Of a DNA stretch of 64,000 bases, positions 3,411 through 57,111 are shown piece by piece. The stretch comes from Heptranchias perlo (taxonomy: Eukaryota): assembly GCF_035084215.1 (NCBI RefSeq), contig NC_090349.1:9858001-9922000 (forward strand), read 5' to 3'. The translations under genes and the position numbers were made by a program. Position 1 is the first letter of the stretch. Every line of letters begins with the position of its first letter. The notes beneath the pieces were generated by a model. The model saw only the letters and a list, made by a program, of their open reading frames with translations, searched no databases and was not told the origin of the DNA.

Positions 3411-4522
3411 CTGGCACTTTGGACATTTGATTGCAGGAAAATGGCAATCTCTCTGGGCTACCAGGATTCTAAGTTTTAATTTCACACACTCAGATTAAAA
3501 TACACATTAATATTTCAAGAGTGAGCTACTAAAATCTCAGGAGTGGTTTTATTACTGTAATATTAACCTTATACTGCAAATCCAAATGTTAATCTTTTAA
3601 AAATAACATAAAGTTTACTTGAACTTGTTCAGTATTCCTTTCCCCAATTCTCTGTTTGTTCCCATTCTCTCTCCATTCTATTATTTTAACTTCAATTTTA
3701 TTTCTTTCATGGCTAATAGCCTTTTCTATTCCTTTTTTAAAAACATTTTAATAAAGTTTACTGATCTGATTTTCTCTGTCTCCCTGACCCCTCAGTCCAC
3801 TTTGGAAATGGGAGCAAGTTTTAAAAACCGTTCATTTGATTAGCCAAGTACGAGTTTCAAAGATCAGCTTTTCAGCCATTACAATGGCAAGAATATGAAG
3901 ATTGGGGTGGCCAAATTGTTAATCGTTAAAATAAAAAATATCTGAAGCTCATAGAGAATGAGGTCGTCTGTGACATGCAAAGGGTTAAATTAATTGTCTA
4001 ATTTAAGGGCAGTACCAAGTTGTGCGGTAAAGAGGTGAGGCCGAGGAACTGAACTAATGAATAGCAGATGGTGCTTAATGTTATTAAAATTAAGGGTCAG
4101 GATTAGTATATTTGTAATAAAAGTTGCAAAAATGGTTGCATAATGAAGGGAGTATTACTTAAAATCATGGATAAGGGATAGCGTTTGAAAACATCATTGC
4201 ACTATGTGGCAATGGTTGGATAGCCCAAATATATTAGACTGTATATATGTAAATCCAGCGATACAAGGCCATGGGAGTGTCAAATGTGGTGATTGAACTT
4301 ACAAAAAGACATGGAGGTGTTGGAAATGATTCTAACAAAGAAAAATGTGAATGCTTTAGGTGGATGAGCTTGAAGAGAGGGTTACAATAGTAAATCACTG
4401 AGTTTCATATAGACAGACTGGTGTGCAAGTGGAGCTAACAATATTGCTGATTGTTAGATGTATTTGAGGAAATTAAGCTCTGCGAGGCATGTGTTTTAAA
4501 TTCATTGTTCTTCCCTCCACAG

Positions 4523-4609
4523 GAGAGTCAGGGCTGGGGAAGTCCACTTTAGTCAAGAGTCTCTTCCTTACAGATCTTTACAAAGACAGGAAACTTCTCA
4601 ATGCTGAAG
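4523..4609 (+). CDS. SEPTIN5: Septin-5 exon with P-loop ([30 protein letters not shown])
   Basis: ccacAG / GTAAG boundaries; G1 motif GESGLGKS; phase compatible with flanking exons. Confidence 0.96.
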
Positions 4610-5552
4610 GTAAGAGCTGATATGAATTGCAAGGGGAAGGTGAAAATACACTCTGCCATTCTGGGGTAAGTGGCAGGATGTGCCCACTGGAGGATGCGGG
4701 GTTGTGGAAGGCTCCATCTGTTAAATATCCCAGGTGGGTGCCTGTGCCACTATGGGTGCCCTCCATAGCAGGAGGGTGGGTGGAGTAATCGAAGCGACAT
4801 TGGTTGGCAACAGCTCATTTGATTGGTAACTGCCCCATCCCACAAATCTTTCCCTGCCTTACCATAGTTTGTTGCTCCTTCACTCCAATTGACCAAAATC
4901 TATCCCAAAAGATCCTCGCTAGGAAGTTCCTCCGGGATTCTCCCAATTGGCCGCTGTAATTTCAGTAGAAGATTGGTGGAAGCCCCGTTTTCATGGAGCA
5001 TCTGGAGTTGCCGCCAATCTTCCACTGAGGAAATTCCCGGTGCCCATATGATATTAAATGGTAATAGTGCCCCATTCATGTTTTCGATAGGGCGCCAATC
5101 TAAAGGGCAACTGAATCTCTTTCTGTACTATGGCAGGGTTCCAGTCGAGTGGTAATGGAGCTCTGTTGGTAATGGGATGGTTATTCATGACCAATATGTA
5201 GAATGTTCTGCGGATTCCTACCGAAAATACCTATTGTACAGTTCCTGTAAGATACTTGACCTGAAGCAATTGGTCAATCGAGACTCAAATCACATCTGGT
5301 ATTATCTTGTTCTGATTCATATTATTTTTTTCACCTATCTGTGCTGATTGCTCTCTATGCCCTGCACTCCTCTTTTGAGCCCTGACCCACGTGCTGTTGC
5401 CCAAGACCAGTGCAGCTAAAAAAATCAGTGCAGATCTGCAGACTTACTGAAGCCTGGGGAGTGGTACGGGTTTGACGTTGTCTGTGCATTGACTGCACAA
5501 TGCAGGAAGTAACTGAGTTTAGATGAAGAAGCCAATATCGAAATCTCTCACA

Positions 5553-6387: not shown

Positions 6388-6511
6388 AGAGGATCAACCA
6401 AACAGTGGAGATTATAAAACACACGGTGGACATTGAAGAGAAAGGTGTCAAACTAAAGTTGACGATAGTTGACACGCCGGGATTCGGGGATGCGGTGAAC
6501 AACATACAAAG
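6388..6511 (+). CDS. SEPTIN5: Septin-5 exon ([41 protein letters not shown])
   Basis: ttacAG / GTATGT; G3 motif DTPG. Confidence 0.96.
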
Positions 6512-6526
6512 GTATGTACATCTCTA

Positions 6527-6735
6527 ACATCACGGAGGATTCGGTTACCATGGAGATGTGAACAGATATCTGACATCACGGAGGATTCGGTTACCATGGA
6601 GATGTGAACAGATATCTGACATCACTGAGGATTCGGTTACCATGGAGATGTGAACAGATATCTGACATCACTGAGGATTTGGTTACCATGGAGATGTGAA
6701 CAGATATCTGATATTACTGAGGATACTGTTACCAT
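6527..6735 (+). repeat. 46-bp minisatellite, about 4.5 copies (ACATCAC(G/T)GAGGATTCGGTTACCATGGAGATGTGAACAGATATCTG)
   Basis: Tandem copies read directly, starting 16 nt into the SEPT5 intron. Confidence 0.95.
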
Positions 6736-7395
6736 AAAGACTGAATATTACGTAGTATTTACCGCACAGAAACAGACCATTCAACCGATTAGGTCTACGC
6801 TGGTATTTATGCTCCACATTAACCTCCTCCCACCCTACTTCATCTCACCCTGTCAACATAATCTTCAATTCCTTTCTTCTTCATGCACTTATCTATTTTC
6901 CCCTTAAATGCATCTATGCAATTCGCCTCAACCACTCCATGTGGTAGCAAGTTCCACATTCTCAATACTCTCTGAGTAAAGAAGTTTCTCCTGAATTCCT
7001 TATTGGATTCATCAGTTATTAGAATTAATCATTAGAATAGATTCAGTGTTGCTGAAGTATTGTTACTATAGAGATATACATTTGGCAGTACATAAACCAC
7101 GCCTCGATATTTATATCAGGATTTATATAAGGATGTCCACACAGAATACCAGCAGTGAAACTTGGTGCACAGTTTGTTCTGTTTGTGGGGCTCTTGCCCA
7201 GATAGTGTCAGCACCTAGATCTCTGGGCCTTGTGTGCAGGGAAAGTTGAACTATCACTTGTCGAGCTAGGAGTACTGAAGCATGAATTAACCCTTACATT
7301 GCTGGCAGCTTCAGAGAATTTCAGGCTACCCCCGGTTGGCCATTTTAAGTTTTCAGCTCACGTACTATGATGCTAACACATGCTCCAATTACAGT

Positions 7396-7496
7396 TGTAA
7401 ACAATTTTACAACACCAAGTTATATTCCAGCAATTTTATTTTAAATTCACAAGCTTTCGGAGGCTACCTCCTTCCTCAGGTGAACGATGTGGAAAT
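7396..7496 (-). mobile_element. ~100-bp Penelope-like terminal insert with minimal type I hammerhead ribozyme; 9-bp TSD AATTACAGT
   Basis: TSD at 7387-7395 and 7497-7505; ribozyme core at 7446-7484. Confidence 0.8.
7446..7484 (-). ncRNA. Minimal hammerhead ribozyme motif
   Basis: ttcac-CTGAGGA-a-ggagg(tag)cctcc-GAAA-gc-TT-gtgaa: intact core with paired stems I and II. Confidence 0.75.
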
Positions 7497-8194
7497 AATT
7501 ACAGTAACAGAGCTAACTCAATTGTCAGGAGTAGTATTAGTATTGTGCAATTAAAAAAGGCACCAGTTAAAAAAAACATTAAAAACTGTAAATGTTTTGG
7601 TGCTATGCTTGACAGGGACGATTTCATCTGCACTGGGTGAAGCCTGTTCTTTATGAATAAGTTTAAGACTAGAGACGAATTAAGAATCCTTGAGACCCTG
7701 GGCACCAAGAACATTCATGGCTCCTCTGTACCTCCTGCACAAATCCCCCCCCCGCCCCCATCCCAACACCAATCCATTAAAACCTACCCCAAAGTTGGGA
7801 GAAGGCTGGGCTGCTGCTCTCCAGTGCAGGGACTCGCAGCTGTTGACGGGCAGCTTCTTGTTCCAATGGAATCAGGGGGCGGGGATGCTGAGCTTCTTGG
7901 GTTGCAACAGGCATGCTGCCTATCGGCCGTAGCTAGCCGCCCAGGCCCCATGATTGGCTACCTTGGGCACGCCCCTGTAGGCCTGTGCTTTAATGCACTC
8001 CTGTTTAAGACAGAAAGAACTTGCAATTACATAGTACCTTTCACACGCTCAAGATATCCCAAAGTGCTTTACAGCCAATTAATTACATTTGATCTCTCAC
8101 CCTAATCTCGGCAGAAACCCCCAGAGAAACAGCTGTAAACAGCCATTTATGCCGTTTCCCTTGGGGGTTCTGATCGTCTCCTGCTGAAGTTAAA

Positions 8195-8291
8195 TTTTAA
8201 ACAATTTTACAACACCAAGTTATAGTCCAGCAATTTTATTTTAAATTCACAAGCTTTCGGAGATTTTCTCCTTCCTCAGGCAAATGTTAAA
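8195..8291 (-). mobile_element. Second hammerhead-bearing insert; 13-bp TSD TGCTGAAGTTAAA; nested in a hairpin MITE
   Basis: TSD at 8182-8194 and 8292-8304; core CTGAGGA-a-ggaga(aaa)tctcc-GAAA-gc-TT-gtgaa at 8246-8284. Confidence 0.8.
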
Positions 8292-8859
8292 TGCTGAAGT
8301 TAAAGGAGGTGATCTGGAGAAGTCCCACAGAATTTGCAGGCCACTGTTGTTGTAACGTAAATGCAGTTACCAATTTGCGCGCAGCAAGGTCGCACAACCA
8401 GCAATGCCATAAATGACCAGATACTCTGTTTTTGGGGATGTTGGTTGAGAGATAAGTGTTGGCCAGGATCCCGGGAGGACTCCCCTGCTCTTTTTTTAAA
8501 TGGTGCACCTGAGTAGGCAGCTCGGGCCTTGGTTTAACATACGGACATACAAAAATGCCGGACATGAAAAGACCAGCCGGTCCATTGAGCCTGTCTCACA
8601 AAGTCATGTTGCAAATAAGCATGATGAGCCCCAATGCTTCCACCCACCCACCATGTAACCCCCTGGGAGAGACAAAAAAAACAGAAAAAAATTGAGGGGA
8701 AAAGAACTCTTGAGAAATTCCCTTCTGACCCCTCAAAGCGATCAAAAATGAGTTCAGAGAGATAACAGTGACCATGAAGCACTTCCCCAATGCCCCACCT
8801 ACCTTTTGTACGCAGTGATATCAGCCCCAGACAGGAACTCAGCCAGCTCACCTTTTGAA

Positions 8860-9200: not shown

Positions 9201-10451
9201 TATCTAATATCTCATTAAGTTTATAATGTGGCTTGAACCCTGAATGGGTCCAGGTTATATGCGGCCCGTGGGGTTGGTCGCTCTGGCTGCCTGCCTCTCT
9301 TCCACGGGTTTCTCCCCGCCCCCTGGTGGCCCTGGAGAAGGAGCACACGGTGTCTGCTGGTGCTGTAGAGGCTTTCCGCGATCAGAGGGACTGGAGGGCA
9401 TGGTGGACACTGATAATATTGCGATTTAATTTGCTCAGTTGGCTTTTGTAATTGATCCATGTAGATGGCATGGGTTGCCCCAGTGTCATCAACAGAGAAA
9501 CAAATTTACACCTGACACCCCGCCCCCTTTTTAAAGCGTGAAACTAAAAAAAAACTTTTAAAAAATAGTGTGGCTTGAACCCAGGACCCCTGACTCAGTG
9601 GCAAGAGTTCTAGTTGACTGATACTTGAGTGTGCAAATTATCCACACCGAGCACACAGTCAAAATCTTGCCCCTTTGTTTTCCTTTCCCCCACCTCTCTC
9701 TTGCCCATTTTCTCTCTTCTGTTTTTTTATTTCATGTCTTTAATTTATATCTAAACAATAAAGCCATTCTACACCATTTTCTAATTTTTAGAAGTCCTTC
9801 AAAATATTTCACTTAACTCAATTCTTTGGCTTCTTGGGGTCCCCGCCCCTCTGCTACATTTCATCTCTTTCCAGTGACGTTCGGCAGGTAGCCTAATCCT
9901 TGTATGTATACTGATTTGAGACACATACAGAATACGTAGTCTGATTGCTGTAACCCTACCTCTGTCGACCGAAGAGCTGGAGAGACAGGTGAGGTAGGAC
10001 AATGAGTGAGGCAGAGACTGGAGCACAGCTGGGGGATCGACAGGTGATGGTGAGGGGAGTCATGATAGAGTATTCATATGTGTGCTCTGGATGGAGCAGG
10101 CTTGATGGAACAGATGGTCTAGTCCCACTTTGTACTCTTAGGTTCCTAAAATATTGCTTCGTAGGCTGTACCCCTACATGTGAGAACATGAGTAATAACA
10201 AACACTGCTGAAAAGTAGACAACAGGACAAGCTTGGAGGGAGAGGCCTCTGATGACTGAATGGCCTTGTCTTGTTCCCATGCTTTCATATGTCTTAAAGT
10301 GATCTCTGATTGACCAAGTGCAGATCATATTACAGCTGTGCTGCTGCTTTGCTGACTATTGCGGGCCCACGTTGCAATAAAGGACTCACAGCACGAGAAC
10401 TCTTTGAGACTTGCAGATCACTCCAGCCTCTCTCTCTCTCTTTTGTTGCAG

Positions 10452-10586
10452 CTGGAAGCCCATAGCCGATTACATCGACCAACAGTTTGAACAATATTTC
10501 CGAGATGAGAGCGGCCTAAACCGGAAGAACATTCAGGATAACCGAGTGCACTGCTGCCTGTATTTTATCTCTCCCTATGGACACGG
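10452..10586 (+). CDS. SEPTIN5: Septin-5 exon ([45 protein letters not shown])
   Basis: ttgcAG / GTAAG; septin [11 protein letters not shown] motif. Confidence 0.96.
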
Positions 10587-11689
10587 GTAAGAGGCAGAGT
10601 TGGGCTGCAGAGTAATTGTATTGCTTTTCTATTGGTTCTTTCTGCTACTCAATAAGTGAGGCAGAAACTGGAGTTTGACAACAATGCTGTGGGGCGAGAG
10701 GGAAGATTCAACGTGGTAGAAGGACAAATATGGACCTGATTGTGAACATATTCCCATTGCTACTGCAGGGGAGGGAGATACCAGGATCTGCTGTTAATTT
10801 TGGGGTTGATACTCATCGAGGGAGGAGCTGTGATTAGTTGATCTGAAGGGGACCAGGTGTTCAAGGAAATTGTTGAGCTCTGTGCTCAATTTGTTCTTTA
10901 GGAGTGAAGTGGGGGTTGAGGGGGGGAAGGGGTGGTGTGAGAAGGAGCAGGTTGTGTATCTCTTGGGGTGTGATGCTAGCAGGATATCGCTGAGCTTTGT
11001 GTCTGATTGTCTATGTATCTTGGGGGAGGGACCTTCTTAAAAGTTTACAGTCTCTGTTTGCAGATCAGTGTTGAGTTTTGTGTTTGAGTGGTTCGATCTG
11101 TGTGTGGGGGTCTCTGTGATTAATTTGTTTTGTTGTGTCTTGGGGGAGAGGTGTCAGATGGGTGCCGAAGGGTCCAATATGGTGGGTGGTGTGCATAAGC
11201 TCATTCTGCGCCAAAAATACGCTGTCCGTCATAATAGTAAAGGCTCCTCCGTAGGCGTCCAGGGTCTGCACCCAAAACAGGCGTAGGATGTCTTTTTGAG
11301 GCCCCTTTGATTGTACAGGCGCTTGGCAGCAAAACCAGTGATCCTTAAAGGGACTGCTGGAGGCTGTCACTGGAAAGATAAATTTGAATTTTTTTGCTTA
11401 CCTTAGTGTGGAGCTGGGAGGAACAGCAGTGCTCCTCCCAGTTCCACACCGGGCAACTGCCAGCCATCGCTTGCCCTACCCATCCTCCGATTGCCTCAGA
11501 ATGACTTTGGCTTGTGTTCGAGCAGGCTGATTTTGCTACCCCGGATCCGGCAAGCTGCCTCTGGGGCCGTGACTGATGGCTGCAGCTCACCAGAAATAAA
11601 CAAATGAGGCTGGCGGACCAATTTGCTGTGGTCCTGCCGCTATCCTCATTAGGCATGTAGCCCTAATTTGAGTGTGATTCAATTTCTAG

Positions 11690-12043: not shown

Positions 12044-12161
12044 GCTGCGGCCGCTGGACACAGAGTTCATGAAGGCATTACATCAGAAAGTGAATATCGT
12101 GCCAGTGATTGCGAAAGCCGACTCCCTCACACCCATTGAGGTGAAGAAACTCAAAGAGAGG
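12044..12161 (+). CDS. SEPTIN5: Septin-5 exon ([39 protein letters not shown])
   Basis: tatAG / GTGAG; G4 motif AKAD. Confidence 0.96.
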
Positions 12162-12790
12162 GTGAGAAACATCATTCATAAAATAACAATATCTCCGAGC
12201 TAAAAACGAGAATGTGAAATCCAGCTCATCCAGATCAAAATCACAGCCTCAATATTATTGTCCGTTAACAACCAGGGAATTGTGCCCAATAGGCCCCAAA
12301 TAATGGTAATAAGGGCCCATGTTTTTAGTCCTAATGATTGGTTTAAAATATCAACTGTTTACGGTCGAGCAGCACTCACTCATTGCGTAGGTGCAAATCT
12401 GCAGTGCAGCCTGTGTTAGTGCTGATGGAGAATGGTATTTGGGACTGAGATCTGTCCTAATCTTTCCTGAATCCTTTCTGCATAAATTCAGTAGCGCATC
12501 TTCTGCAATGGTGTCTCCTCTGTGCCAGCGTGGCAAGCTCCAGTGTTCTATCCTTAGCCCCTCCTTTTCCTCATTTATACATTGCCTCTTGATATTATCC
12601 TTAAGCATGGGGCCAGTTTCCACATGCAGGCTGATGACACCTAACTTTACCTCACTTGCTGCCGCCGTCAACTCCATGACCGTTGCTGTGCAATTTGGCT
12701 GCCTGTCTAGCATCCCAGCTGTGGAGAATGCAGAACTTTCTTCAGCTTAACAGTAGCAAGACCAGAACCATCTTCATTTCTTGCCCATGC

Positions 12791-26181: not shown

Positions 26182-28872
26182 TTTTTTTTCCAAAAAATAT
26201 ACTTTATTCATAAAATTTGCAGCAGTTCATACAATACAGTTCTCATATCACATTCCAAACATACACAATATCGATTATGCAATTTGCAGGTTACATCAAG
26301 TACAGTTCAATGAAACACATTGGACATCATTACAGTTCATGACACTCTAGGGTGCCTCATTGCATCACAATCAATACAGGTGATTCATTACAGATTCATT
26401 GCAGATTTATTGCGGGTACATTACATCAATTTTGAATTTTACATTCTGCCCGAGGGGGTTTTTCCCTGATTGCAGCCCCTCGGTATACAATGGCGGGAAG
26501 GCTCTAAACGGTTGCCTTTCCCCACAGAGCCTTTGCGGCGGTCGCACCCATCCTCAGTGCGTCCCTCAGCACGTAGTCCTGGACCTTGGAATGTGCCAGT
26601 CTGCAACACTCGGTCGAGGACAGCTCCTTGTGCTGGAAGACCAGCAAGTTTCGGGCAGACCAAAGGGTGTCTTTCACCGAGTTGATGGTCTTCCAGCAGC
26701 AACTGATGTCCGTCTCAGTGTGCGTCCCCGGGAACAGCCCGTAGAGCACAGAATCCTGTGTTACGGAACTGCTCGGGACGAACCTGGACAGATACCACTG
26801 CATCTCTCTCCAGACCTTCTTTGCAAAGGCACATTCCAGAAGGAGATGGGTGACGGTCTTGTCTCCACCGCAGCCTCCTCTGGGACAGCGCGCGGTGGCG
26901 CTGAGAGTCCGGGAGTACATGAAGGATCTGACGGGAAGGTCCCTTCTCACCACCAGCCAAGCTAGGTCTTGGTGCTTGTTTGAAAGCTCTGGCGATGAGG
27001 CGTTCTGCCAAATGACATTGACAGTCTGCTCGGGGAACCAACCGACAGGATCCACCATCTCCTTTTCCCGCAGGGTCTCGAGGACGTTACGTGTGGACCA
27101 CTTGCTGATCGCCTTGTGGTCAAAGGTGTTTTTCTGCACAAACTTTTCCACGAAGGACAGGTGGGGCGGAACGGTCCAACTGGACGGAGCGTTCCGTGGC
27201 AGCGTGGCCAGGCCCATCCTTCTCAACACCGGGGACAGGTAGAACCTCAGCACGTAGTGACACTTTTTGTTTGCGTACTGAGGGTCTATGCACAGCTTGA
27301 TGCAGCCGCACACAAAGGTGGCCATCAGGATGAGGGCCATGTTGGGCACGCCTTTCCCCCCTTTCTCTGGAGATTTGTACATCGTGACCCTGCGGAAACA
27401 GTCCATTTTTGATCTCCAGACAAAGCGGAAGATGGCACGGGTGACTGTCGAGGCGCAGGAGCGAGGTATGGGCCAGACCTGCACCACGTACAGCAACACC
27501 GAGAGCACCTTGCACCTGATGACCAGACTCTTGCCCACGATCGAGAGGGATCGTCGATCCCACAGTCCCAGTTTCTGCTTAACCTTGGAAATACGCTCCT
27601 CCCAGTTTTTGGTGCACGCCCCGCCCCCCCCCGAACCAGATCCCCAGCACCTTCAGGTAATCCGACCTGACGGTGAAGGGGACAAAGGATCGGTCGGTCC
27701 AGTTCCCAAAGAACATGGCCTCGCTCTTGCTACGATTTACCCTGGCCCCCGAGGCCAGTTCGAACTGGTCGCAGATGCTCATCAATCTGCGGACCGAGAG
27801 CTGATCCGAGCAAAAGACGGCGACGTCATCCATGTACAGGGAGGCCTTGACCTGAGTACCTCCGCTGCCTGGGATCGTCACCCCTCTTATGCCTGCATCC
27901 CTCCTGATGGACTCGGCAAGGGGTTCGATGCAACACACGAACAAGACGGAGGAGAGAGGACAGCCCTGCCTGACTCCAGATTTGATCGGAAAGCTTTCTG
28001 ATTCCCACCTGTTGATTGAAACTGCGCTACTGATGTTTGTGTAGAGCAGTTGGATCCAATTGCGGATTCCCTCCCCAAACCCCATTTTGGAGAGCACGTC
28101 CATCATGTACGTGTGGGATATTCTGTCAAAGGCCTTCTCCTGGTCCAGGCTGATCAGGCAGGTGTTCACCCACCTGTCCTGTACGTAGGCAATCGTATCC
28201 CTGAGTAGTGCCAGGCTATCAGAGATCTTCCTGCCGGGTACGGTGCAGGTCTGATCGGGGTGGATCACCACCTCCAGGGCTGACTTGACCCGATTGGCGG
28301 TGACCTTGGACAGAATTTTGTAGTCCACGTTAAGTAGTGAGATGGGTCGCTGATTTTTGATTTCTTCCCTCTCCCCCTTCCGCTTGTAGATGAGGGTGAT
28401 GATGCCTTTCCTCATGGAGTCTGACATGCTCCCTGCCAGAAGCATACCCCCGTACACTTCCAGCAGGTCTGGGCCTATCCAGTCCCACAGAGCCGAGTAC
28501 AACTCCATCGGTAAGCCGTCGCTTCCGGGAGTCTTACTCTTCTCAAAGGAACGGATGGCCTTTGTCAGTTCGTCCAGAGTTAGCGGGTGATCCAGACTCT
28601 CCCGCTTGCTGTCGTCTAGAACCTCCGTGATAGACGACAAGAAGGAGTGGGAGGCCGCGCTGTCTGTGGGCTTCGCGTCGTACAGTCCGGCATAAAAGGA
28701 TTTGCAGATCCTCAGTATGTCGGGCTGTGAGGACGTGACCGAGCCGTCCTCTTCCTTCAGTCTGCTAATCACAGAGCTCTCTCTGTGCACCTTTTGGAAG
28801 AAGAAGTGCGAGCAAGTCTCGTCCTGCTCCACGGAGCGGACTCTGGACCGGAAGATGATCTTGGAGGCCTCG
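26182..28872 (-). mobile_element. 5'-truncated Tx1/L1-clade non-LTR retrotransposon (RT plus C-terminal zinc-binding domain, AATAAA and poly-A tail)
   Basis: KTPGSDG, RPISLLNVDYKILSK, LDQEKAFD, GVRQGCPLS, YMDD; CxxxxC..ET-like/HLLLEC motif; frameshift in the C-run near 27620-27632; tail at 26182-26210. Confidence 0.92.
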
Positions 28873-30039
28873 GACTGGCTCAATAATAGCGTTACCATCG
28901 TGACACTCATAATGCATCTATGAAGTCCTCTTCTCAACGCTGACCGTGCGGAACTGCGTTTTACCTGGAGCAGTTGAGGTTTACATAGATACGTTTTCCA
29001 AAACAACAAAGAAAGCGTGAAGCGATTTGAAAAATAGGGGTCCTGAGTTAGGAATTTAAAAAACGTGCTGGTAAAATCGAATTTCAAGAAAAGCTCTGAA
29101 ATTATAAGCATATGTATGTTTATGCATAGATATATTTGCGAGTCTCTAGGTGCACTGACATTTAACTATGTAAATTAGATTAACTCTTTACTCCTATTTC
29201 AGTAATGCCTGGGTTTCCCTTTTCACTTTGAAAAGTGGGGCACTCTACCAGTGAAATTGGATAGATTTTTATTAAGGAGATTTTCAGTCAAGTAATATAA
29301 TCTGAGGAATATCTTTTCCCTCTTCATCCTGATTTTTATATATTACACTTTATTTATAGCGTACCTGGTCAAAATCAAATTTATGGCGTCCCCAACAATC
29401 CCAGCCTTCTGTTGATCTATTCTTACGTGGAGTTCCATTTGTATAGCGTTACATTCATCGCATGAGTGTTATAACAGGCGTCATACAAACATATTTATTC
29501 AGGTTTGGATGAGAAGTACCACTGAATGGCATTAGTTGACTTCTATCATTCCCCGTTTTCTGATTTCATCTTCATGTAATCCTCGCTCCTTACTCACATT
29601 GCTGCTAAAATACTCTTCACATTCCAATGGTGGGTGCACTATAAAGACAGCACTAAAGCAATAAGTCACAACTGGTTTTCTAGCAAACTAGAAACAATGT
29701 TGTCAAGTTTTGCAAAGATCTGAAATCTATTTGACGCGCTTCCTTGTCATGCTGAGATAACATGCAGCTCCAAGAGGGTGACAGAGATAAACTGGTAAAA
29801 AAATATGCCAACTCATCCACGCTACTATAGTAGCCGGATACACTTAACCATCCAGCAAAGTAGATAAGCCTTTTTTGAAGAAAGGATTGTGACTTCATGC
29901 AAGAGCATTGCACCCAGCACTGAAGCCCGTTATGTACAACAGCACCAAGGTTGAAAAGACTGGAAGAAAAGAAAAATCAAGAAGTTGACGCCCTTTTTAG
30001 GTAGGAAGAAAGGTTTAATAAGGGAAGTAAATAGTTTCA

Positions 30040-30959: not shown

Positions 30960-33680
30960 TCATAGTAGGTACAACGCAGGAGGAGACCATTCGGCCCATC
31001 GTGCCTGTGCCGTCTCTTTGAAAGCTATCCAATTAGTCCCATTCCCCTGCTCTTCCCCCATAGCCCTGTATTTTTTCCCTTCAAGCATTTACCCAATTCC
31101 CTTTTGAGAGTTTATATTGAATCTGCCTCCACCACCCTTTCAGGCAGTGCATTCCAGATCATAACAACTCGCTGCATAAAAATATTTCCTCATGTTGCCT
31201 AGAATCATAGAATCAAAGAAAAGTGGTATTTGGCTCATCGAGTCTGCAACGACTCCATGCATGAGCAATCCAACTAGTCCCACTTTGCTGCCCTATCCCC
31301 GTAGCTTTGCACGTTTTTTTTTCATTTCAAGTACTTACCTAGTTCCCTTTTGAAGGCCATAATTGAATCTGCTCCACCACTCCCTCGGGCAATGCATTCC
31401 AGATCCCAACCTCATGTTTTTCCTCATGTGGCCTTTGGTTCTTTTGCCAATCACCTTAAATCTATGCCCTCTGGTTCTTGACCCTTCTGCCAATGGGAAC
31501 AGTTTCTCTCTATCCACTCTGTCTAGACCCTTCATGATTTTGAATACCTCTATCAAATCTCCTCTCAACCTTCTCTGTTCCAAGGAGAACAATCCCAGCT
31601 TCTCCTATCTATCCACGTAATTTTAGTCCCTCATCCCTGGAATCATTCCACTAAATCTCATCTGCACCCTCTCTAATGCCTTCACACCCTTCCTAAAGTG
31701 CGATGCCCAGAACTGGACACAATATTCCAGTTGTGGCCGAACCAGTGTTTTATAAAGGTTCATCATGACTTCCTTGCTTTTGTACTCTATGCCTCTATTT
31801 ATAAAGCCCAGGAACCCGTATGATTTTTTAACCACTTTCTCAACCTGCCCTGCCACCTTCAACGATTTGTGCACATATATCCCCAAATCTCTCTGTTTCT
31901 CTACCCATTATAGAATTGTGCCCTCTAGTTTATAATGCCTCTCCTCATTTTTCCTACCGAAATGCATCACCTCGCATTTTTCCACGTTAAACTTCATCTG
32001 CCACGTGTCTGCCCATGCCATCAGCCAGTCTATATCCTCTTGAAATCTATCACTACCCTCCTCACTGTTCACTATGCTTTCAAGTTTTGTGTCATCTGCA
32101 AATTTTGAAATGGTGCCCTGTACTACCAAGTACAAGTCATTAATATATACCAAGAAAAGCAGTGGTTCCAGCACAGACCCCTGGGGAAGACCACTGCACA
32201 CCTCCCTCCAGTCCAAAAAACAACCGTTCACCACTACTCTCTGTTTCCTGTCATTTAGCCAGTTATGTATGCATGTTGATATTGCCCCCTTTATTCCATG
32301 GACCACAATGTTGATAACAAGCCTACCATGTGGCACTTTATCAAACGCTTTTTGAAAACCCGTGTACACCATATCAACTACATTGCCCTCATCTACGCTC
32401 TCTGTTACCTCATCAAACAACTCTATCAAGGTGGTTAAACACGATTTGCCTTTAACAAATCCGTGTTGGCTTTCCCTAATGAATCCACATTCGTCCATGT
32501 GACGGTTAATTCTGTCCTGGGTTATCATTTCCAAATGTTTTGCCACCACCGAGGTTAAACTGACTGGCCTATAGTTGCTGGCATATAGTTTTTTGAATAA
32601 GGCTGTAACACTTGCAATTCTCCAGTGCTCTGGTACCACCCCTGGATCTTAGGATGTCTGGAAGATTATGGCCAGTACCTCTACAATTTCCCCCCTTACT
32701 TCCCTCAGGGTGCATCCCACCCGAACCAGGTGAGTTATCTATTTTAAGTACAGTTAGTCTTTCTAATACCTCTTCTTTCTCAATTTTTAGCCCATCCAGT
32801 ATCTTAGCTATATCTTCCTTTACCGAAACTCTGGCAGCATCTTCTTCCTTGGTAATTACCTATTTAGTACCTCCGCCATGCCCACTACCTCCATGAGTAG
32901 ATCTCCTTTATGGTCCCTAATCAGTCCCACTCCTCTTATTACCTGTTTACTGTTAACATGTCTGTAGAAGACTTTTGGATTCCCTTTTATGTTGCCCGCT
33001 AGTCTATTCTCATACTTTCTCTTTACCCCCCTTATTTCCTTTTTCACTTCCCCTCTGAACTTTCTTTATTTTCTTTGGTTGGCACTTGTTGACACTCTGG
33101 TTGGCACTTGAGCCTCTGGCTCTTTTACCGATCAACTTAAATCTGTGTCCTCTGGTTACTGAACCTTCTACCATTGGAAAAAGTTTCTTCCTATTTACTC
33201 CATCAAAACCATTTATGATCTTGAACACCTCTATCAAATCTCCCCTTAACCTTCCCTGTTCTAATGAGAACAACCCCAGCTTCTCGAATCTCTCCACATA
33301 ACTGAAGTCCCTCATCCCTGGTACCATTCTAGTAAATCTCCTCTGCACCCTCTCTAAGGCCATCCTTCCTAAAGTGTGGTGCCCAGAATTGAACACAATA
33401 CTCCAACTGAGGCCTAACTAGTGTTTTATAAAGGTTTAGCATAACTTCCTTGCTTTTAATAAAGCCCAGGATCCCATATGCTTTTTTAACAGCCTTCTCA
33501 ACTTGTCTTGCCACCTTCAAAGATTTGTGTCTGTGCACCTCCAGGTCTTTTTGTTCCCGTACCCCCTTTAAAATTGTACCATTTAGTTTATTTTGCCTCT
33601 CAAAATGCATCACTTCACACTTCTCTGCGTTAAATTTCATCAACCATGTGTCTGCCCATTTCACCAATCTGTCTATGTTT
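30960..33680 (-). mobile_element. Stack of nested/adjacent CR1 fragments (RT-containing copy about 31200-33090; further 3' fragments)
   Basis: NYRPVSLTSVV, QHGFVKGKSC, PQGSVL, FADD; interrupted by frameshifts. Confidence 0.9.
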
Positions 33681-53243: not shown

Positions 53244-54188
53244 ATGTCAGGACAGTCCAGCCCCGTGTTATGCTCTTCCTGCTCTATGTGGGAAATCAGG
53301 GACCCTTCCGGTGTCCCTGACGACCATGTGTGCGGGAAATGTATCCAGCTGCAGCTACTGACAAACCGCATTGCGGCACTGGAGCTGCGGATGGATTCAT
53401 TATGGAGCATTCGCGATGCTGAGAACGTCGTGGATAGCACGTTTAGTGAGATGGTCACACCGCAGGTAAAGGTTGTACAGGCAGGAAGTAATTGGGTGAC
53501 CACCAGGCAGAGTAAGAAGAGCAGGCAGGCAGTGCAGGGGTCCCCTGTGGCCGTCCCCCTCTTAAACAAATATACCGCTTTGGATATTGTTGAGGGGGAT
53601 GACTTATCAGGGGAAGGCAGCAGCAGCCAACTTCCTGGCACCAGGGGTAGCTCTTCTGCACAGGCTGGGAGGAAAAAGAGTGGAAGAGCTATAGTGGTAG
53701 GGGATTCTATCGTAAGGGGAACAGACAGGCGTTTCTGTGGCCGTAAACGTGACTCCAGGATGGTTTGTTGCCTCCCTGGTGCCAGGGTCATGGATGTCAC
53801 TGAGCGGCTACAGGGCATTCTCAAGGGGGAGGGTGAGCAGGCAGAGGTCGTGGTCCACATTGGGACCAACGACATAGGTAGGAAGGGAGATGAGGTCCTG
53901 CATCAAGAATTTAGGGAGCTAGGTAGCAGATTAAAGAGCAGGACCTCAAAGGTTGTAATCTCTGGATTACTCCCAGTGCCACGGGCTAGTGAGTATAGAA
54001 ATAGGAGGATAGAACAGATGAATGCGTGGCTAAAGAGTTGGTGCAGGAGGGAGGGTTTCAGTTTCCTGGATCACTGGGCCTGCTTCTGGGGAAGGTGGGA
54101 CTTGTACAAGTCGGACGGGTTGCACCTGAACCAGAGCGGGACAAATATCCTTGCGGGGAGGTTTGCTAGCACTGTTGGGGGGGTTTAA
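53244..54188 (+). CDS. CR1 ORF1 (CxxC..CxxC zinc finger/coiled coil plus SGNH esterase)
   Basis: CSSC..CGKC; GDSI, PGA, HIGTND, DGLH blocks. Confidence 0.92.
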   Translation: MSGQSSPVLCSSCSMWEIRDPSGVPDDHVCGKCIQLQLLTNRIAALELRMDSLWSIRDAENVVDSTFSEMVTPQVKVVQAGSNWVTTRQSKKSRQAVQGSPVAVPLLNKYTALDIVEGDDLSGEGSSSQLPGTRGSSSAQAGRKKSGRAIVVGDSIVRGTDRRFCGRKRDSRMVCCLPGARVMDVTERLQGILKGEGEQAEVVVHIGTNDIGRKGDEVLHQEFRELGSRLKSRTSKVVISGLLPVPRASEYRNRRIEQMNAWLKSWCRREGFSFLDHWACFWGRWDLYKSDGLHLNQSGTNILAGRFASTVGGV

Positions 54189-57111
54189 ACTAACTTGGCA
54201 GGGGGATGGGATACAGAGTGGAGCTACAATAGGGGGTGATGTGCAGCCAAATATAGAGAAAAAAACAAGTCAGCTTGGAAGACAGGGCAAATATGTAAGG
54301 GCAAGGCTGGATGGCATCTATTTTAATGCAAGGAGTCTTGCGAATAAGGTGGATGAACTGAAGGTGTTGATAAACACATGGAAGTATGATATTGTTGCTG
54401 TCACAGAGACATGGTTGAGGGAGGGGCAAGACTGGCAGCTCAATATTCCGGGGTACAGAATCTTCAGGCGAGACAGAGGGGGAGGTATAAGAGGAGGGGG
54501 GGTCGCAATATTAATTAAAGAATCAATTACTGCCATAAGGAGGGATGATATATTAGCAGGTTCCTCTAATGAGGCCATATGGGTGGAGCTTAAAAACAAA
54601 AAGGGGGCAAGCACTTTGATGGGAGTGTACTATAGGCCCCCAAACAGTCAGGGGGAGATCGAGGAACAGATATGTAGGCAAATCTCAGAAAATTGTGCAA
54701 ATAATAGGGTAATAATAGTGGGGGATTTCAACTTCCCCAATATTAACTGGGATACTCAGAGTGTAAAAGGCTTAGAGGGTACAAAATTCTTAACGTGCAT
54801 CCAGGAGAGCTTTTTGAGCCAGCATGTAGAAAGTCCTACAAGAGAGGGGGCGGTACTGGACCTAATTCTAGGGAATGTGGCCGGCCAAGTGGAAGAAGTG
54901 CTAGTAGGTGAGCACTTTGGTGACAGTGACCATAATTCGGTGAGATTTAAGGTGGTCATGGAAAAGGACAGGGAGGGGCCGGAAATAAAGGTTCTAAATT
55001 GGGGGAAGGCCGATTTTAATAGGATAAGGCAGGATCTGGCCAAAATGGACTGGGATCAGCTGCTTGTAGGAAAATCCGCATCGGAGCAATGGGAGTCTTT
55101 CAGAAGGGAGATTGAGACCATACAATGGCAACATGTTCCCGTAAAGGTCAAGGGTGGTTCCAAGAACTCCAGGGAACCTTGGATGTCAGGGGATATACGA
55201 GAATGGATTAGGAAAAAAAGGAGGGCTTTTGGCAGATACAAAAGGCTAAAGACGGAGGAAGCCCTAGAGGAGTACAAAAAGTGCAGGGGGATACTTAAAA
55301 AAGAAATTAGGAGATCAAGGAGGGGCCATGAAATAACACTGGCGAGCAAAATAAAGGAAAATCCTAAGATGTTTTATAAGTATATTAAGGGTAAGAGGAT
55401 GACTAGGGAAAAAATAGGGCCCATTAGGGACAAAAATGGCAATCTGTGTGTGGAGCCGGCAGATGTAGGAGGGGTTCTAAATGAATTTTTTGCATCTGTT
55501 TTCACTATGGAGAAGGACGATGTAGACATAGAAATACGGCAGGGGGACTGTGATATACTCGAACATATTAACATCGAGCGGGAGGAGGTATTGGCGGTTT
55601 TAGTAGGCCTAAAAATGGATAAATCCCCAGGCCCGGACGAAATGTATCCCAGGCTACTGTGTGAGGCAAAGGAGGAGATTGCGGGGGCTCTGACACATAT
55701 ATTCAGAACCTCTCTGGCCACAGGGGATGTGCCAGAGGACTGGAGAACCGCTAATGTAATACCATTATTCAAGAAGGGGAGTAGGGAAAAACCGGGGAAC
55801 TACAGGCCAGTGAGCCTAACATCAGTGGTAGGAAAATTATTGGAAAAAATTCTGAAGGACAAAATTAGTCTCCACTTGGAGAAGCAAGGATTAATCAGGG
55901 ATAGTCAACATGGCTTTGTCAAGGGAAAATCATGTCTGACTAATTTGATTGAATTTTTTGAGGGGGTGACTAGGCGTGTGGATGAGGGTAACGCAGTGGA
56001 TGTGGTATACATGGATTTCAGTAAGGCCTTCGATAAAGTCCCCCACAGGAGACTGGTCAAGAAGGTACGAGCCCATGGAATCCAGGGTGCCTTGGCACTT
56101 TGGATACAAAACTGGCTTAGTGGCAGAAGGCAGAGGGTGATGGTCGAAGGTTGTTTTTGTGACTGGAAGCCTGTGGCCAGTGGGGTACCACAGGGATCGG
56201 TGCTGGGTCCCTTGCTGTTTGTGGTCTACATTAATGACTTGGATATGAATGTAAAAGGTATGATCAGTAAGTTCGCTGATGATACAAAGATTGGTAGGGT
56301 GGTAAATAGCGAGGAGGATAGCCTCAGTCTGCAGGACGATATAGATGGGTTGGTCAGATGGGCGGAACAGTGGCAAATGGAATTTAACCCGGAAAAGTGC
56401 GAGGTGATGCACTTTGGAGGGACTAACAAGGCAAGGGAATACACAATGAATGGGAGGACCCTAGGCAAGACAGAGGGTCAGAGGGATCTTGGTGTGCAAG
56501 TTCACAGATCCCTGAAGGCGGCGGAACAGGTAGATAAGGTGGTAAAGAAGGCATATGGGATACTTGCCTTTATTAGCCGAGGCATAGAATATAAGAGCAA
56601 GGAGGTTATGATGGAGCTGTATAAAACACTGGTTAGGCCACAGCTGGAGTACTGTGTGCAGTTCTGGTCGCCACACTACAGGAAGGATGTGATCGCTTTG
56701 GAGAGGGTGCAGAGGAGATTCACCAGGATGTTACCAGGGCTGGAGCGCTTCAGCTATGAAGAGAGACTGGGAAGATTGGGTTTGTTTTCCTTGGAGCAGA
56801 GGAGGCTGAGGGGGGACATGATTGAGGTGTACAAAATTATGAGGGGCACAGATAGGATGGATACTAAGGAGCTTTTTCCCTTCGTTGAGGGTTCTATAAC
56901 AAGGGGACATAGATTCAAGGTAAAAGGCGGGAGGTTTAGAGGGGATTTGAGAAAGAACTTTTTCACCCAGAGGGTGGTTGGAGTCTGGAACTCACTGCCT
57001 GAAAGGGTTGTGGAGGCAGGAACCCTCACAACATTCAAGAAGCATTTGGATGAGCACTTGAAATGCCATAGCATACAAGGCTACGGACCAAATGCTGGAA
57101 TATGGGATTAG
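54151..57111 (+). CDS. CR1 ORF2 (APE endonuclease plus reverse transcriptase); start undefined
   Basis: YFNARS, VTETW, GDFN, SDH; KSPGPD, NYRPVSL, DFSKAFD, PQGSVLGP, FADD; 986 codons open. Confidence 0.95.
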   Translation: MRGGLLALLGGFKLTWQGDGIQSGATIGGDVQPNIEKKTSQLGRQGKYVRARLDGIYFNARSLANKVDELKVLINTWKYDIVAVTETWLREGQDWQLNIPGYRIFRRDRGGGIRGGGVAILIKESITAIRRDDILAGSSNEAIWVELKNKKGASTLMGVYYRPPNSQGEIEEQICRQISENCANNRVIIVGDFNFPNINWDTQSVKGLEGTKFLTCIQESFLSQHVESPTREGAVLDLILGNVAGQVEEVLVGEHFGDSDHNSVRFKVVMEKDREGPEIKVLNWGKADFNRIRQDLAKMDWDQLLVGKSASEQWESFRREIETIQWQHVPVKVKGGSKNSREPWMSGDIREWIRKKRRAFGRYKRLKTEEALEEYKKCRGILKKEIRRSRRGHEITLASKIKENPKMFYKYIKGKRMTREKIGPIRDKNGNLCVEPADVGGVLNEFFASVFTMEKDDVDIEIRQGDCDILEHINIEREEVLAVLVGLKMDKSPGPDEMYPRLLCEAKEEIAGALTHIFRTSLATGDVPEDWRTANVIPLFKKGSREKPGNYRPVSLTSVVGKLLEKILKDKISLHLEKQGLIRDSQHGFVKGKSCLTNLIEFFEGVTRRVDEGNAVDVVYMDFSKAFDKVPHRRLVKKVRAHGIQGALALWIQNWLSGRRQRVMVEGCFCDWKPVASGVPQGSVLGPLLFVVYINDLDMNVKGMISKFADDTKIGRVVNSEEDSLSLQDDIDGLVRWAEQWQMEFNPEKCEVMHFGGTNKAREYTMNGRTLGKTEGQRDLGVQVHRSLKAAEQVDKVVKKAYGILAFISRGIEYKSKEVMMELYKTLVRPQLEYCVQFWSPHYRKDVIALERVQRRFTRMLPGLERFSYEERLGRLGLFSLEQRRLRGDMIEVYKIMRGTDRMDTKELFPFVEGSITRGHRFKVKGGRFRGDLRKNFFTQRVVGVWNSLPERVVEAGTLTTFKKHLDEHLKCHSIQGYGPNAGIWD

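What the first reader, a model, noticed from the sequence alone, without database searches (positions are those of the whole stretch)
7387..8304. Two ~100-bp TSD-flanked retro-inserts carrying intact, covarying minimal hammerhead ribozymes in a SEPT5 intron
Seen in sequence: minus strand 7446-7484 reads ttcac-CUGAGGA-a-ggagg(uag)ccucc-GAAA-gc-UU-gugaa. The copy at 8246-8284 has stem II ggaga(aaa)ucucc, a compensatory pair change, and keeps stem I through G-U wobbles. Each insert has its own TSD (9 bp AATTACAGT; 13 bp TGCTGAAGTTAAA), so they inserted independently. Established: Penelope-like elements carry minimal type I hammerheads with a palindromic stem III (here AAGCUU) that cleave as dimers. 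Inference: this is a tiny mobile ribozyme unit (retrozyme-like or truncated pLTR). The two copies are 800 bp apart in direct orientation and could pair on one antisense transcript.
Basis: partly seen in the sequence, partly recalled or inferred. Interest (0 to 1): 0.8.

Follow-up and report, generated by a model that had tools for sequence, protein, structure and literature searches.

The report
Penelope-type hammerhead mini-inserts in shark septin intron
Two roughly 100-bp jumping-gene fragments, each carrying a complete minimal hammerhead ribozyme motif of the kind known from Penelope-like retrotransposons, sit in a shark septin intron; the kind is ordinary, but both inserts are recent enough to be missing from other DNA of the same species.

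Summary
Minus-strand inserts at 7396-7496 (101 bp, 9-bp TSD) and 8195-8291 (97 bp, 13-bp TSD) are 93% identical over 86 bp. Each carries a complete minimal type-I hammerhead motif. A hammerhead descriptor hits only these two sites in 64 kb, and none in 300 shuffles.

The motif has every published hallmark of Penelope-like-element (PLE) min-HHRs (PMC4209133):
- an extra nucleotide between A9 and G10.1
- a G10.1-C11.1 pair
- a palindromic AGCU in place of helix III

Public DNA contigs of the same shark add two points. The family is very abundant, and precise empty-site contigs exist for both inserts. The two are therefore independent, recent, polymorphic insertions.

They lie antisense in an intron of a plus-strand septin gene. 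I found no support for a transcript joining them, for ribozyme activity, or for a host function. The window holds no RT/GIY-YIG PLE, so the PLE link rests on motif type and insertion hallmarks.

With only two copies, covariation is suggestive but not significant. The scan's first readers flagged Penelope hammerheads 18 times on other pieces of this genome. Verdict: a new member of a known kind. The modest interest lies in evidence of present-day PLE-type retroposition in a shark and a possibly discrete 100-nt unit.

The parts
7396..7496 (-). Insert A: 101-bp PLE-type short retro-insertion (hammerhead at the 5' end plus a ~50-nt 3' tail)
   Evidence: The empty-site joint 7386->7497 skips 110 bp with 9 letters shared, in a DNA contig of the same species.
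7445..7485 (-). Minimal type-I hammerhead motif A: stem I GUUCAC/GUGAAU, CUGAGGA, extra A, stem II GGAGG(UAG)CCUCC, GAAA, AGCU palindrome, U17
   Evidence: Descriptor hit; MFE recovers stems I and II.
7497..7505 (.). Target-site duplication of insert A, 5' side in element orientation (ACTGTAATT on the minus strand)
   Evidence: both=9 at the empty-site joint.
7387..7395 (.). Target-site duplication of insert A, 3' side
8195..8291 (-). Insert B: 97-bp copy of the same family, a different subfamily
   Evidence: The empty-site contig (record 7, 298 nt, 0 mismatches) joins 8181 to 8292, skipping 110 bp with 13 letters shared.
8245..8285 (-). Minimal type-I hammerhead motif B: stem I AUUUGC/GUGAAU (two G-U pairs), stem II GGAGA(AAA)UCUCC, same core
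8292..8304 (.). Target-site duplication of insert B, 5' side (TTTAACTTCAGCA on the minus strand)
   Evidence: both=13.
8182..8194 (.). Target-site duplication of insert B, 3' side
6405..6527 (+). Context: upstream septin exon (ORF holding the DTPGFGD G3 motif; Pfam Septin profile positions 46-82)
10411..10590 (+). Context: downstream septin exon (Pfam Septin profile positions 81-126). The inserts lie in the intron between these two exons, antisense to the gene.

Best explanation
Each insert is a short retro-copy of the ribozyme-bearing 3' region of a Penelope-like element, or of a non-autonomous derivative using the same machinery. The inferred mechanism is as follows. A PLE RT/GIY-YIG endonuclease made staggered cuts in the intron DNA. 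It reverse-transcribed the template RNA from an internal start site about 50 nt downstream of the hammerhead. It stopped about 12-17 nt upstream of the CUGAGGA box. The result is a ~100-bp insert flanked by a TSD of variable length (9 and 13 bp) with no poly(A).

The two events were separate, came from two subfamilies, and are recent; both are still polymorphic.

The hammerhead is a cis-element of the source element. It lacks its own helix III, so it could act only when paired with a second copy through the AGCU palindrome, probably with protein help. As isolated genomic monomers antisense in a septin intron, the two copies most likely do nothing for the host.

Shown here:
- the inserts, their TSDs and the empty alleles
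- a complete min-HHR motif with the PLE hallmarks
- high family abundance in this species and absence from a related species

Inferred: mobilisation by PLE enzymes, the source element, and any cleavage.
For: Motif and chance:
- The sequence was read directly.
- The descriptor hits only these two sites, with 0 hits in 300 shuffles.

Insertion:
- Own TSDs and precise empty-site contigs: 8181->8292 with 13 shared letters, 0 mismatches and at least 109 nt on each side.
- 7386->7497 with 9 shared letters plus 21 nt, which equals the k-1 overlap of a k=31 graph.

Family:
- Summed contig depth on the element bins is 0.5-6.7 million, against about 46-56 on the unique flanks in run X1.
- 23,642 contigs were laid, 5,410 of them at 99% identity or more.
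- No alternative letter reaches 10% in 7451-7485 (core, stem II, AGCU, 5' strand of stem I). Four positions vary: 7446 at the distal end of stem I's 3' strand, and 7442, 7430 and 7425 in the tail.
- Organism B (X9) covers the flanks and the neighbouring SINE but has zero depth on both inserts.

Literature:
- Most min-HHRs occur as single dispersed motifs ascribed to truncated PLEs (PMC4209133).
- PLE insertions are heavily 5'-truncated, with the HHR near the 3' end (PMC8557442).
- A purified PLE RT starts internally, downstream of the HHR (PMC11167929).

A/B comparison: 7 differences fall in the 41-nt hammerhead, none in the core, and all helix changes preserve pairing. Only 2 differences fall in the 48 nt downstream.
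Against: - No RT/GIY-YIG element was found in the window. Its RT ORFs are LINE-type: Exo_endo_phos, zf-RVT and an esterase-type ORF1.
- I could not search the rest of the genome, so homology of the insert to a PLE pLTR is not shown.
- A and B share the same 5' end within a few bases, and so does the one contig of organism C. Random 5' truncation does not predict this.
- Rfam hammerhead models give no hit even at E<=10.
- Covariation from two copies is not significant.
- Depth from Logan contigs is not a copy number.
Confidence: 0.78

Rival explanations
1. The ~100-nt unit is a discrete non-autonomous element in its own right (a 'mini-PLE' or hammerhead SINE, or a retrozyme monomer). It would have a defined 5' end and consist only of the hammerhead plus the RT-recognition tail. 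It would be copied full-length by PLE enzymes and would not be a randomly 5'-truncated copy of a 3-kb element.
For: - Inserts A and B are 101 and 97 bp and start at homologous positions (ATTTCC.ACAT / TTTA.ACAT).
- The organism C contig matches copy A from 7496 to 7391, so it has the same 5' boundary.
- Both empty-site joints skip exactly 110 bp.
- Abundance is very high.
- The 2026 preprint (10.64898/2026.07.22.740005) derives animal retrozymes from PLE pLTRs and reports dispersed monomers and consensus lengths down to 51 bp.
Against: - There are only three observations of the 5' end.
- Loose-end consensus sequences upstream of 7483 and 8280 resemble each other (agreement 0.48-0.53) and run on beyond the 5' ends of A and B. 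This hints at longer family members.
- There is no internal Pol III promoter or tRNA-like head.
- No tandem array is present here.
Confidence: 0.3
2. A LINE-mobilised SINE or LINE tail fragment that happens to carry a hammerhead-like motif (as in the schistosome Sm-alpha SINEs), unrelated to Penelope.
For: Several LINE RT ORFs lie in the window, and the whale-shark genome paper (PMC8455134) describes a large CR1 LINE fraction. Short TSD-flanked inserts are also typical of SINEs.
Against: - The inserts show no similarity to any LINE 3' end in the window.
- They have no tRNA-like head, and no poly(A) or microsatellite tail.
- The motif carries the specific PLE min-HHR signature: the extra nucleotide after A9 and AGCU in place of helix III (PMC4209133).
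Confidence: 0.05
3. The pair is a functional module. An antisense transcript spanning both copies would fold them into a double hammerhead that cuts itself, regulating the septin locus.
For: The copies are in direct orientation 800 bp apart. Their 3' stem I strands and AGCU palindromes are identical, so a trans dimer is sterically conceivable. A GC-rich, CCAAT-box-like stretch lies between them on the minus strand.
Against: - Both inserts are absent from other chromosomes of the species, so neither is fixed.
- X5, the run guessed to be RNA, has zero depth on the unique sequence between them. Its element/SINE depth ratios equal those of the DNA run.
- The putative promoter-like stretch lies downstream of copy B in the minus-strand sense, so a transcript from it would hold only copy A.
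- PLE min-HHRs cleave weakly even as dimers (PMC4209133).
Confidence: 0.03
4. Chance resemblance: a short repeat whose sequence happens to match a loose hammerhead descriptor.
For: Rfam gives no hit and the folding z-scores are modest.
Against: The descriptor gave 0 hits in 300 shuffles. Three hallmarks that are not part of the basic core definition are all present. The hammerhead core and stem II are the least variable stretch across the family.
Confidence: 0.02

Closest known systems
Minimal hammerhead ribozymes (min-HHR) of Penelope-like elements (Cervera & De la Pena 2014, PMC4209133; dimer cleavage: Lunse, Weinberg & Breaker, cited in PMC6765202)
   Same: - Type-I topology with CUGANGA and GAAA boxes.
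- An unpaired nucleotide between A9 and G10.1, and a G10.1-C11.1 pair.
- No helix III loop, with palindromic 15.2-16.2 (AGCU).
- Helix I short and open.
- Dispersed single copies with subfamilies that differ by pair-preserving changes.
- Found in non-mammalian vertebrates.
   Different: - Helix II is 5 bp here, against the 7-8 bp of the schistosome families.
- The host is a shark. I found no paper in the held library reporting PLE hammerheads in sharks.
- No flanking PLE ORF is available to prove pLTR origin.
- Activity is untested.
5'-truncated insertions of EN+ Penelope-like elements (Poseidon/Neptune type; PMC8557442, PMC11167929)
   Same: TSD-flanked with variable TSD length, no poly(A), the HHR near the 3' end, and extreme 5' truncation. 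The insert's 3' end lies a fixed distance downstream of the HHR, as expected from internal RT initiation.
   Different: In the anole Poseidon element the ORF starts inside the HHR and RT starts well over 100 nt downstream. Here there is no ATG, and the tail is only about 50 nt after the cleavage site. The recurrent 5' end suggests a discrete unit.
Animal non-LTR retrozymes (PMC7229834; preprint 10.64898/2026.07.22.740005)
   Same: Non-autonomous hammerhead-bearing retroelements of low GC, proposed to derive from PLE pLTRs. Dispersed monomers exist.
   Different: Retrozymes are head-to-tail tandem repeats of about 170-400 bp with canonical type-I HHRs (loop 1-loop 2 contacts) that yield circRNAs. 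Here there are two separate single inserts with their own TSDs, unique DNA between them, and a minimal HHR without loop 1.
Schistosome Sm-alpha / Sj-alpha SINE-like hammerhead elements (cited in PMC6765202)
   Same: Short, high-copy, non-autonomous retroposons carrying a hammerhead.
   Different: Those have a Pol III promoter and a canonical HHR. None is seen here.

Membership tests
PLE-type minimal hammerhead (min-HHR, PMC4209133) | Conserved core: C3U4G5A6N7G8A9, G12A13A14, A15.1-U16.1, H17 | tested here: met
   Both copies read CUGAGGA ... GAAA-GC-U-U.
PLE-type minimal hammerhead (min-HHR, PMC4209133) | [quoted passage not shown] | tested here: met
   An extra A follows CUGAGGA in both copies; the descriptor matched only with extra=1.
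PLE-type minimal hammerhead (min-HHR, PMC4209133) | G10.1-C11.1 closing pair of helix II | tested here: met
   GGAGG...CCUCC and GGAGA...UCUCC; pair 35-47 is G-C in both.
PLE-type minimal hammerhead (min-HHR, PMC4209133) | No helix III loop; palindromic 15.2-16.2 allowing a dimer | tested here: met
   A-GC-U (AGCU) is self-complementary in both copies.
PLE-type minimal hammerhead (min-HHR, PMC4209133) | Family with compensatory changes in the helices | tested here: inconclusive
   There is 1 double and 3 single pair-preserving changes between A and B, with 100% of cells paired, but n=2 (259/500 shuffles reach this). The family contigs show no variant at 10% or more in the core or stem II.
PLE-type minimal hammerhead (min-HHR, PMC4209133) | Resides in the pLTR of an RT + GIY-YIG element | not testable with these tools
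   There is no PLE ORF in the window, and the rest of the genome could not be searched. A metagenome scan gave 0 hits.
PLE-type minimal hammerhead (min-HHR, PMC4209133) | Self-cleavage as a dimer | not testable with these tools
   Needs in vitro transcription of monomer and dimer constructs.
Rfam hammerhead families (Hammerhead_1, _3, _II, HH9, HH10) | Covariance-model score at or above the gathering threshold | tested here: not met
   No hammerhead hit at gathering score or at E<=10 on 7300-8400. This is expected for a motif lacking the helix III hairpin.
Penelope-like element insertion | Variable-length TSD, no poly(A), precise empty site | tested here: met
   The TSDs are 9 and 13 bp, and empty-site contigs exist for both inserts.
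Penelope-like element insertion | Sequence homology of the insert to the 3' end or pLTR of an autonomous PLE | not testable with these tools
   No autonomous PLE sequence of this genome is on hand.
Animal non-LTR retrozyme | Head-to-tail tandem repeats bounded by hammerheads | tested here: not met
   The two copies have separate TSDs and separate empty alleles. The 698 bp between them is unique DNA plus an unrelated SINE fragment.
Animal non-LTR retrozyme | Canonical type-I HHR with loop 1-loop 2 tertiary contacts | tested here: not met
   Stem I is open with no loop 1, and loop 2 is 3 nt.
Classical SINE | tRNA/5S/7SL-derived head with a Pol III promoter, and a LINE-derived tail | tested here: not met
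   ARAGORN finds nothing in 7000-8700, and the inserts show no similarity to the LINE ends in the window.

The most novel reading that the evidence does not exclude
The 100-nt unit is the smallest self-contained ribozyme-bearing retroposon so far: a hammerhead plus a ~50-nt RT-recognition tail. It would be a discrete, very high-copy non-autonomous partner of a Penelope-like element that is transposing today in a shark, as shown by two polymorphic insertions 800 bp apart. The hammerhead or its bound protein would define the 5' end of the copy.
Probability: 0.25. Interest if true: 0.55.

Novelty: new member of a known kind. Interest (0 to 1): 0.3.

Why it matters
Minimal hammerheads in Penelope-like elements have been known since 2014, in thousands of copies per vertebrate genome, so the motif itself is not news.

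Two things here have some value. First, both inserts have intact empty alleles in DNA of the same species. That points to PLE-type retroposition in a cartilaginous fish now or very recently, and gives two ready-made polymorphic markers. Second, the recurrent ~100-nt length and shared 5' end hint at a minimal mobilisable unit (ribozyme plus tail). Such a unit could serve as a compact substrate for working out what PLE reverse transcriptases recognise and what the hammerhead is for. That question is still open, because cleavage was dispensable for insertion in the one reconstituted system (PMC11167929).

Tried and rejected
- Rfam at gathering score over the whole window, and at E<=10 over 7300-8400: no hammerhead hit. 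I take this as a limit of models that require a helix III hairpin, not as evidence against the motif.
- First descriptor, without the extra nucleotide after A9: no hits at all. This showed that the insertion is essential to the reading.
- Further copies in the window by sensitive blastn: none.
- Relaxed core scan including the U3-A8 variant: only two unconvincing extra matches.
- Metagenome scan with a 25-nt stretch shared by both copies: 0 hits.
- The search of earlier findings by sequence: blank.
- Autonomous PLE in the window: the RT ORFs are LINE-type and none has GIY-YIG.
- tRNA-like SINE head: none.
- Expression: the only runs guessed to be RNA are kept as contigs, and X5's depth ratios match the DNA run. 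No statement on transcription is possible.
- Copy number: summed contig depth is 10^4-10^5 times the flanks. The tool warns this is not a copy number, and per-position depths are inconsistent, so I give no figure beyond 'very abundant'.
- Lunse et al. (PMC5785218) is not held; I cite it only through PMC6765202.

Full report
**What is there.** Read on the minus strand, the region holds two copies of one short element.
- Copy A is 7496 to 7396 (101 bp), bracketed by ACTGTAATT at 7505-7497 and 7395-7387.
- Copy B is 8291 to 8195 (97 bp), bracketed by TTTAACTTCAGCA at 8304-8292 and 8194-8182.
- BLASTN within the window finds only these two, 93% identical over 86 bp.
- MAFFT shows that from the CUGAGGA box to the 3' end only five columns differ up to column 108, plus one near the 3' end. 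The 12-17 nt upstream align with small indels.

**The hammerhead motif.** Each copy begins with this layout: stem I 5' strand (GUUCAC in A, AUUUGC in B), CUGAGGA, one extra A, stem II (GGAGG-UAG-CCUCC in A, GGAGA-AAA-UCUCC in B), GAAA, G-C, U16.1, U17, then stem I 3' strand (GUGAAU in both).
- A descriptor of my own required stem I of at least 4 bp, stem II of at least 4 bp, 0-1 inserted nucleotide, a palindromic A..U segment and H17. It hits exactly these two places on either strand of the 64-kb window, and nothing in 300 block shuffles.
- A looser core scan, including the U3-A8 variant, adds only two unconvincing matches.
- ViennaRNA recovers stems I and II as the MFE both for the 41-nt motifs and inside the full inserts. 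The z-scores are modest, -2.0 and -1.2.
- Rfam's hammerhead models do not score the motif, at gathering threshold or at E<=10. This is expected, since there is no helix III hairpin.

**Comparison with the known class.** Cervera and De la Pena (PMC4209133) defined minimal hammerheads in the terminal repeats of Penelope-like elements. They list four features that were not in their descriptor but recur:
- families with compensatory changes
- a conserved G10.1-C11.1 pair
- palindromic 15.2-16.2

Both copies show the last three exactly. The same paper states that most such motifs occur as single dispersed elements, probably from truncated PLEs. It reports thousands of copies in fishes, coelacanth, frogs and reptiles. 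It also found that single motifs do not cleave and that dimers cleave only weakly.

Other papers add relevant mechanism:
- PLE insertions are heavily 5'-truncated, with the HHR near the 3' end (PMC8557442).
- A purified anole Poseidon RT starts reverse transcription internally, downstream of the HHR. It prefers AT-rich targets, and it inserts equally well with a catalytically dead HHR (PMC11167929).
- A 2026 preprint derives animal retrozymes from PLE pLTRs and reports dispersed monomers.

In the 6-nt AAGCUU, A14 and U17 belong to the core and the cleavage site.

**Covariation.** Between A and B all 11 helix pairs remain standard pairs. One pair changes on both sides (G-C to A-U, stem II). Three stem I pairs change on one side, to or from G-U. 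With two sequences this is no better than shuffling (259/500).
- The distribution of differences is suggestive. Seven fall in the 41-nt hammerhead, none of them in the core, against two in the 48 nt downstream.
- That fits selection on source copies for a foldable ribozyme plus a constrained tail, but it is not proof.
- Two of the stem I differences sit side by side (CA in A, TG in B). Both could be decay products of one CpG, so they are weak evidence for selection.

**Family evidence from public reads.** All available runs are Logan contigs, so depth is indicative only. These points come from laying four runs on 7300-8400 at 80% likeness or better.
- In DNA run X1 (organism A, the window's species), summed contig depth is about 46-56 on unique sequence and 0.5-6.7 million on the element bins. 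23,642 contigs were laid, 5,410 of them at 99% identity or more. That count includes contigs on an unrelated SINE at 8003-8113.
- Among contigs laid on copy A, alternative letters reaching 10% occur only at 7425, 7430, 7442 and 7446. Position 7446 is the distal end of stem I's 3' strand; the other three are in the tail.
- Organism B (X9) has contigs on the flanks and the SINE but zero depth on both inserts. The family is therefore lineage-specific.
- Organism C (X10) gives one 155-nt contig at depth 2.8, 98% identical to copy A over 7391-7496 in different flanks. This is more likely trace DNA than a resident family.

**Empty sites.** One X1 contig (record 7, 298 nt, no mismatches) joins 8181 directly to 8292. 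It skips 110 bp, with 13 letters fitting either side, which is exactly insert B plus one TSD. Another contig (record 3, 602 nt) runs 8077 to 7497 and then continues 21 nt from 7386, with 9 shared letters. Those 21 + 9 = 30 nt are the k-1 overlap expected at a bubble in a k=31 graph. Both inserts are therefore absent from other chromosomes of this sample or species. They are independent, precise, recent insertions, and the family is or was very recently active.

**Context.**
- ORF pieces on the plus strand match Pfam Septin in order: 4489-4620, 6405-6527, 10411-10590 and 12069-12203 (profile positions 9-39, 46-82, 81-126, 135-175). The inserts therefore lie in a septin intron, antisense to the gene.
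- I did not test SEPT5 orthology.
- The window's reverse transcriptases are LINE-type and none has a GIY-YIG domain.
- No tRNA-like head is present.
- No tail is shared with the local LINEs.

**Expression and the 'pairing on one transcript' idea.** X5, guessed to be RNA, has no contigs on the unique sequence between the copies. Its depth relative to X1 is the same on the hammerhead element (0.03-0.06) as on the SINE (0.035). It therefore behaves like low-coverage DNA and says nothing for expression. Nothing supports a joint antisense transcript.

**Verdict.** These are two ordinary, recently inserted, PLE-type short retro-copies carrying intact minimal hammerhead motifs.
- What is not shown: homology to an RT/GIY-YIG element, and any cleavage.
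- The main open alternative, about 0.25-0.3, is that the 100-nt unit is a discrete non-autonomous element and not a random truncation. A, B and the organism C contig share the same 5' end, and both empty-site joints skip 110 bp. Against this, loose-end consensus sequences hint at longer relatives.

First-stage readers of this scan flagged Penelope hammerheads 18 times on other pieces of the same genome. Those notes are unverified, but they agree with the high abundance seen here.

Noticed in passing
window 8003-8113: Fragment of a very abundant SINE, with a conserved core like the Deu-type SINE core as I recall it. It is shared by organisms A and B: summed contig depth is 0.3-2 million in X1 and 13-92 thousand in X9. 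It is unrelated to the hammerhead inserts.
   Followed up: partly
window 7780-7990, minus strand: GC-rich low-copy repeat (depth 100-650 against about 46) with CCAAT-box and GC-box-like motifs and a donor-like GGG|GTAGGT. It lies between the two inserts. The 150-aa plus-strand ORF 7653-8105 over it has no Pfam match, and X5 gives no RNA support.
   Followed up: partly
window 7383-7386 and 8178-8181: In element orientation both 3' TSDs are followed directly by GGAG. This may be a target preference of the endonuclease, but n=2.
   Followed up: no
window 7455-7490 and 8255-8290, plus strand: On the septin sense strand, the complement of stem II plus CUGAGGA reads as a pyrimidine tract ending in CAG|G (…CCTCCTTCCTCAG|GT… in A, …TTTTCTCCTTCCTCAG|GC… in B). 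This is a splice-acceptor-like site that antisense copies of this family would scatter through introns.
   Followed up: no
window 53244-57111 (+), 26504-29111 (-), 31908-32639 (-): LINE remnants. One has an Exo_endo_phos + RVT_1 ORF2 preceded by a GDSL/esterase-type ORF1. Two others have RVT_1 or zf-RVT ORFs. None is a Penelope-like element.
   Followed up: partly
window 7391-7395 (X10 record 8): The organism C contig matches copy A five bases into what I call the 3' TSD (ACTGT). Either the family's 3' end includes these bases and the real TSD of A is shorter, with microhomology at priming, or it is chance.
   Followed up: no
window 7459-7495 and 8259-8288 (table 5c): A few low-depth contigs of organism A go back from the element's 5' start to the end of stem II, at the same relative position in A-type and B-type copies. 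Some genomic copies elsewhere therefore carry partial head-to-tail duplications of the 5' half.
   Followed up: no
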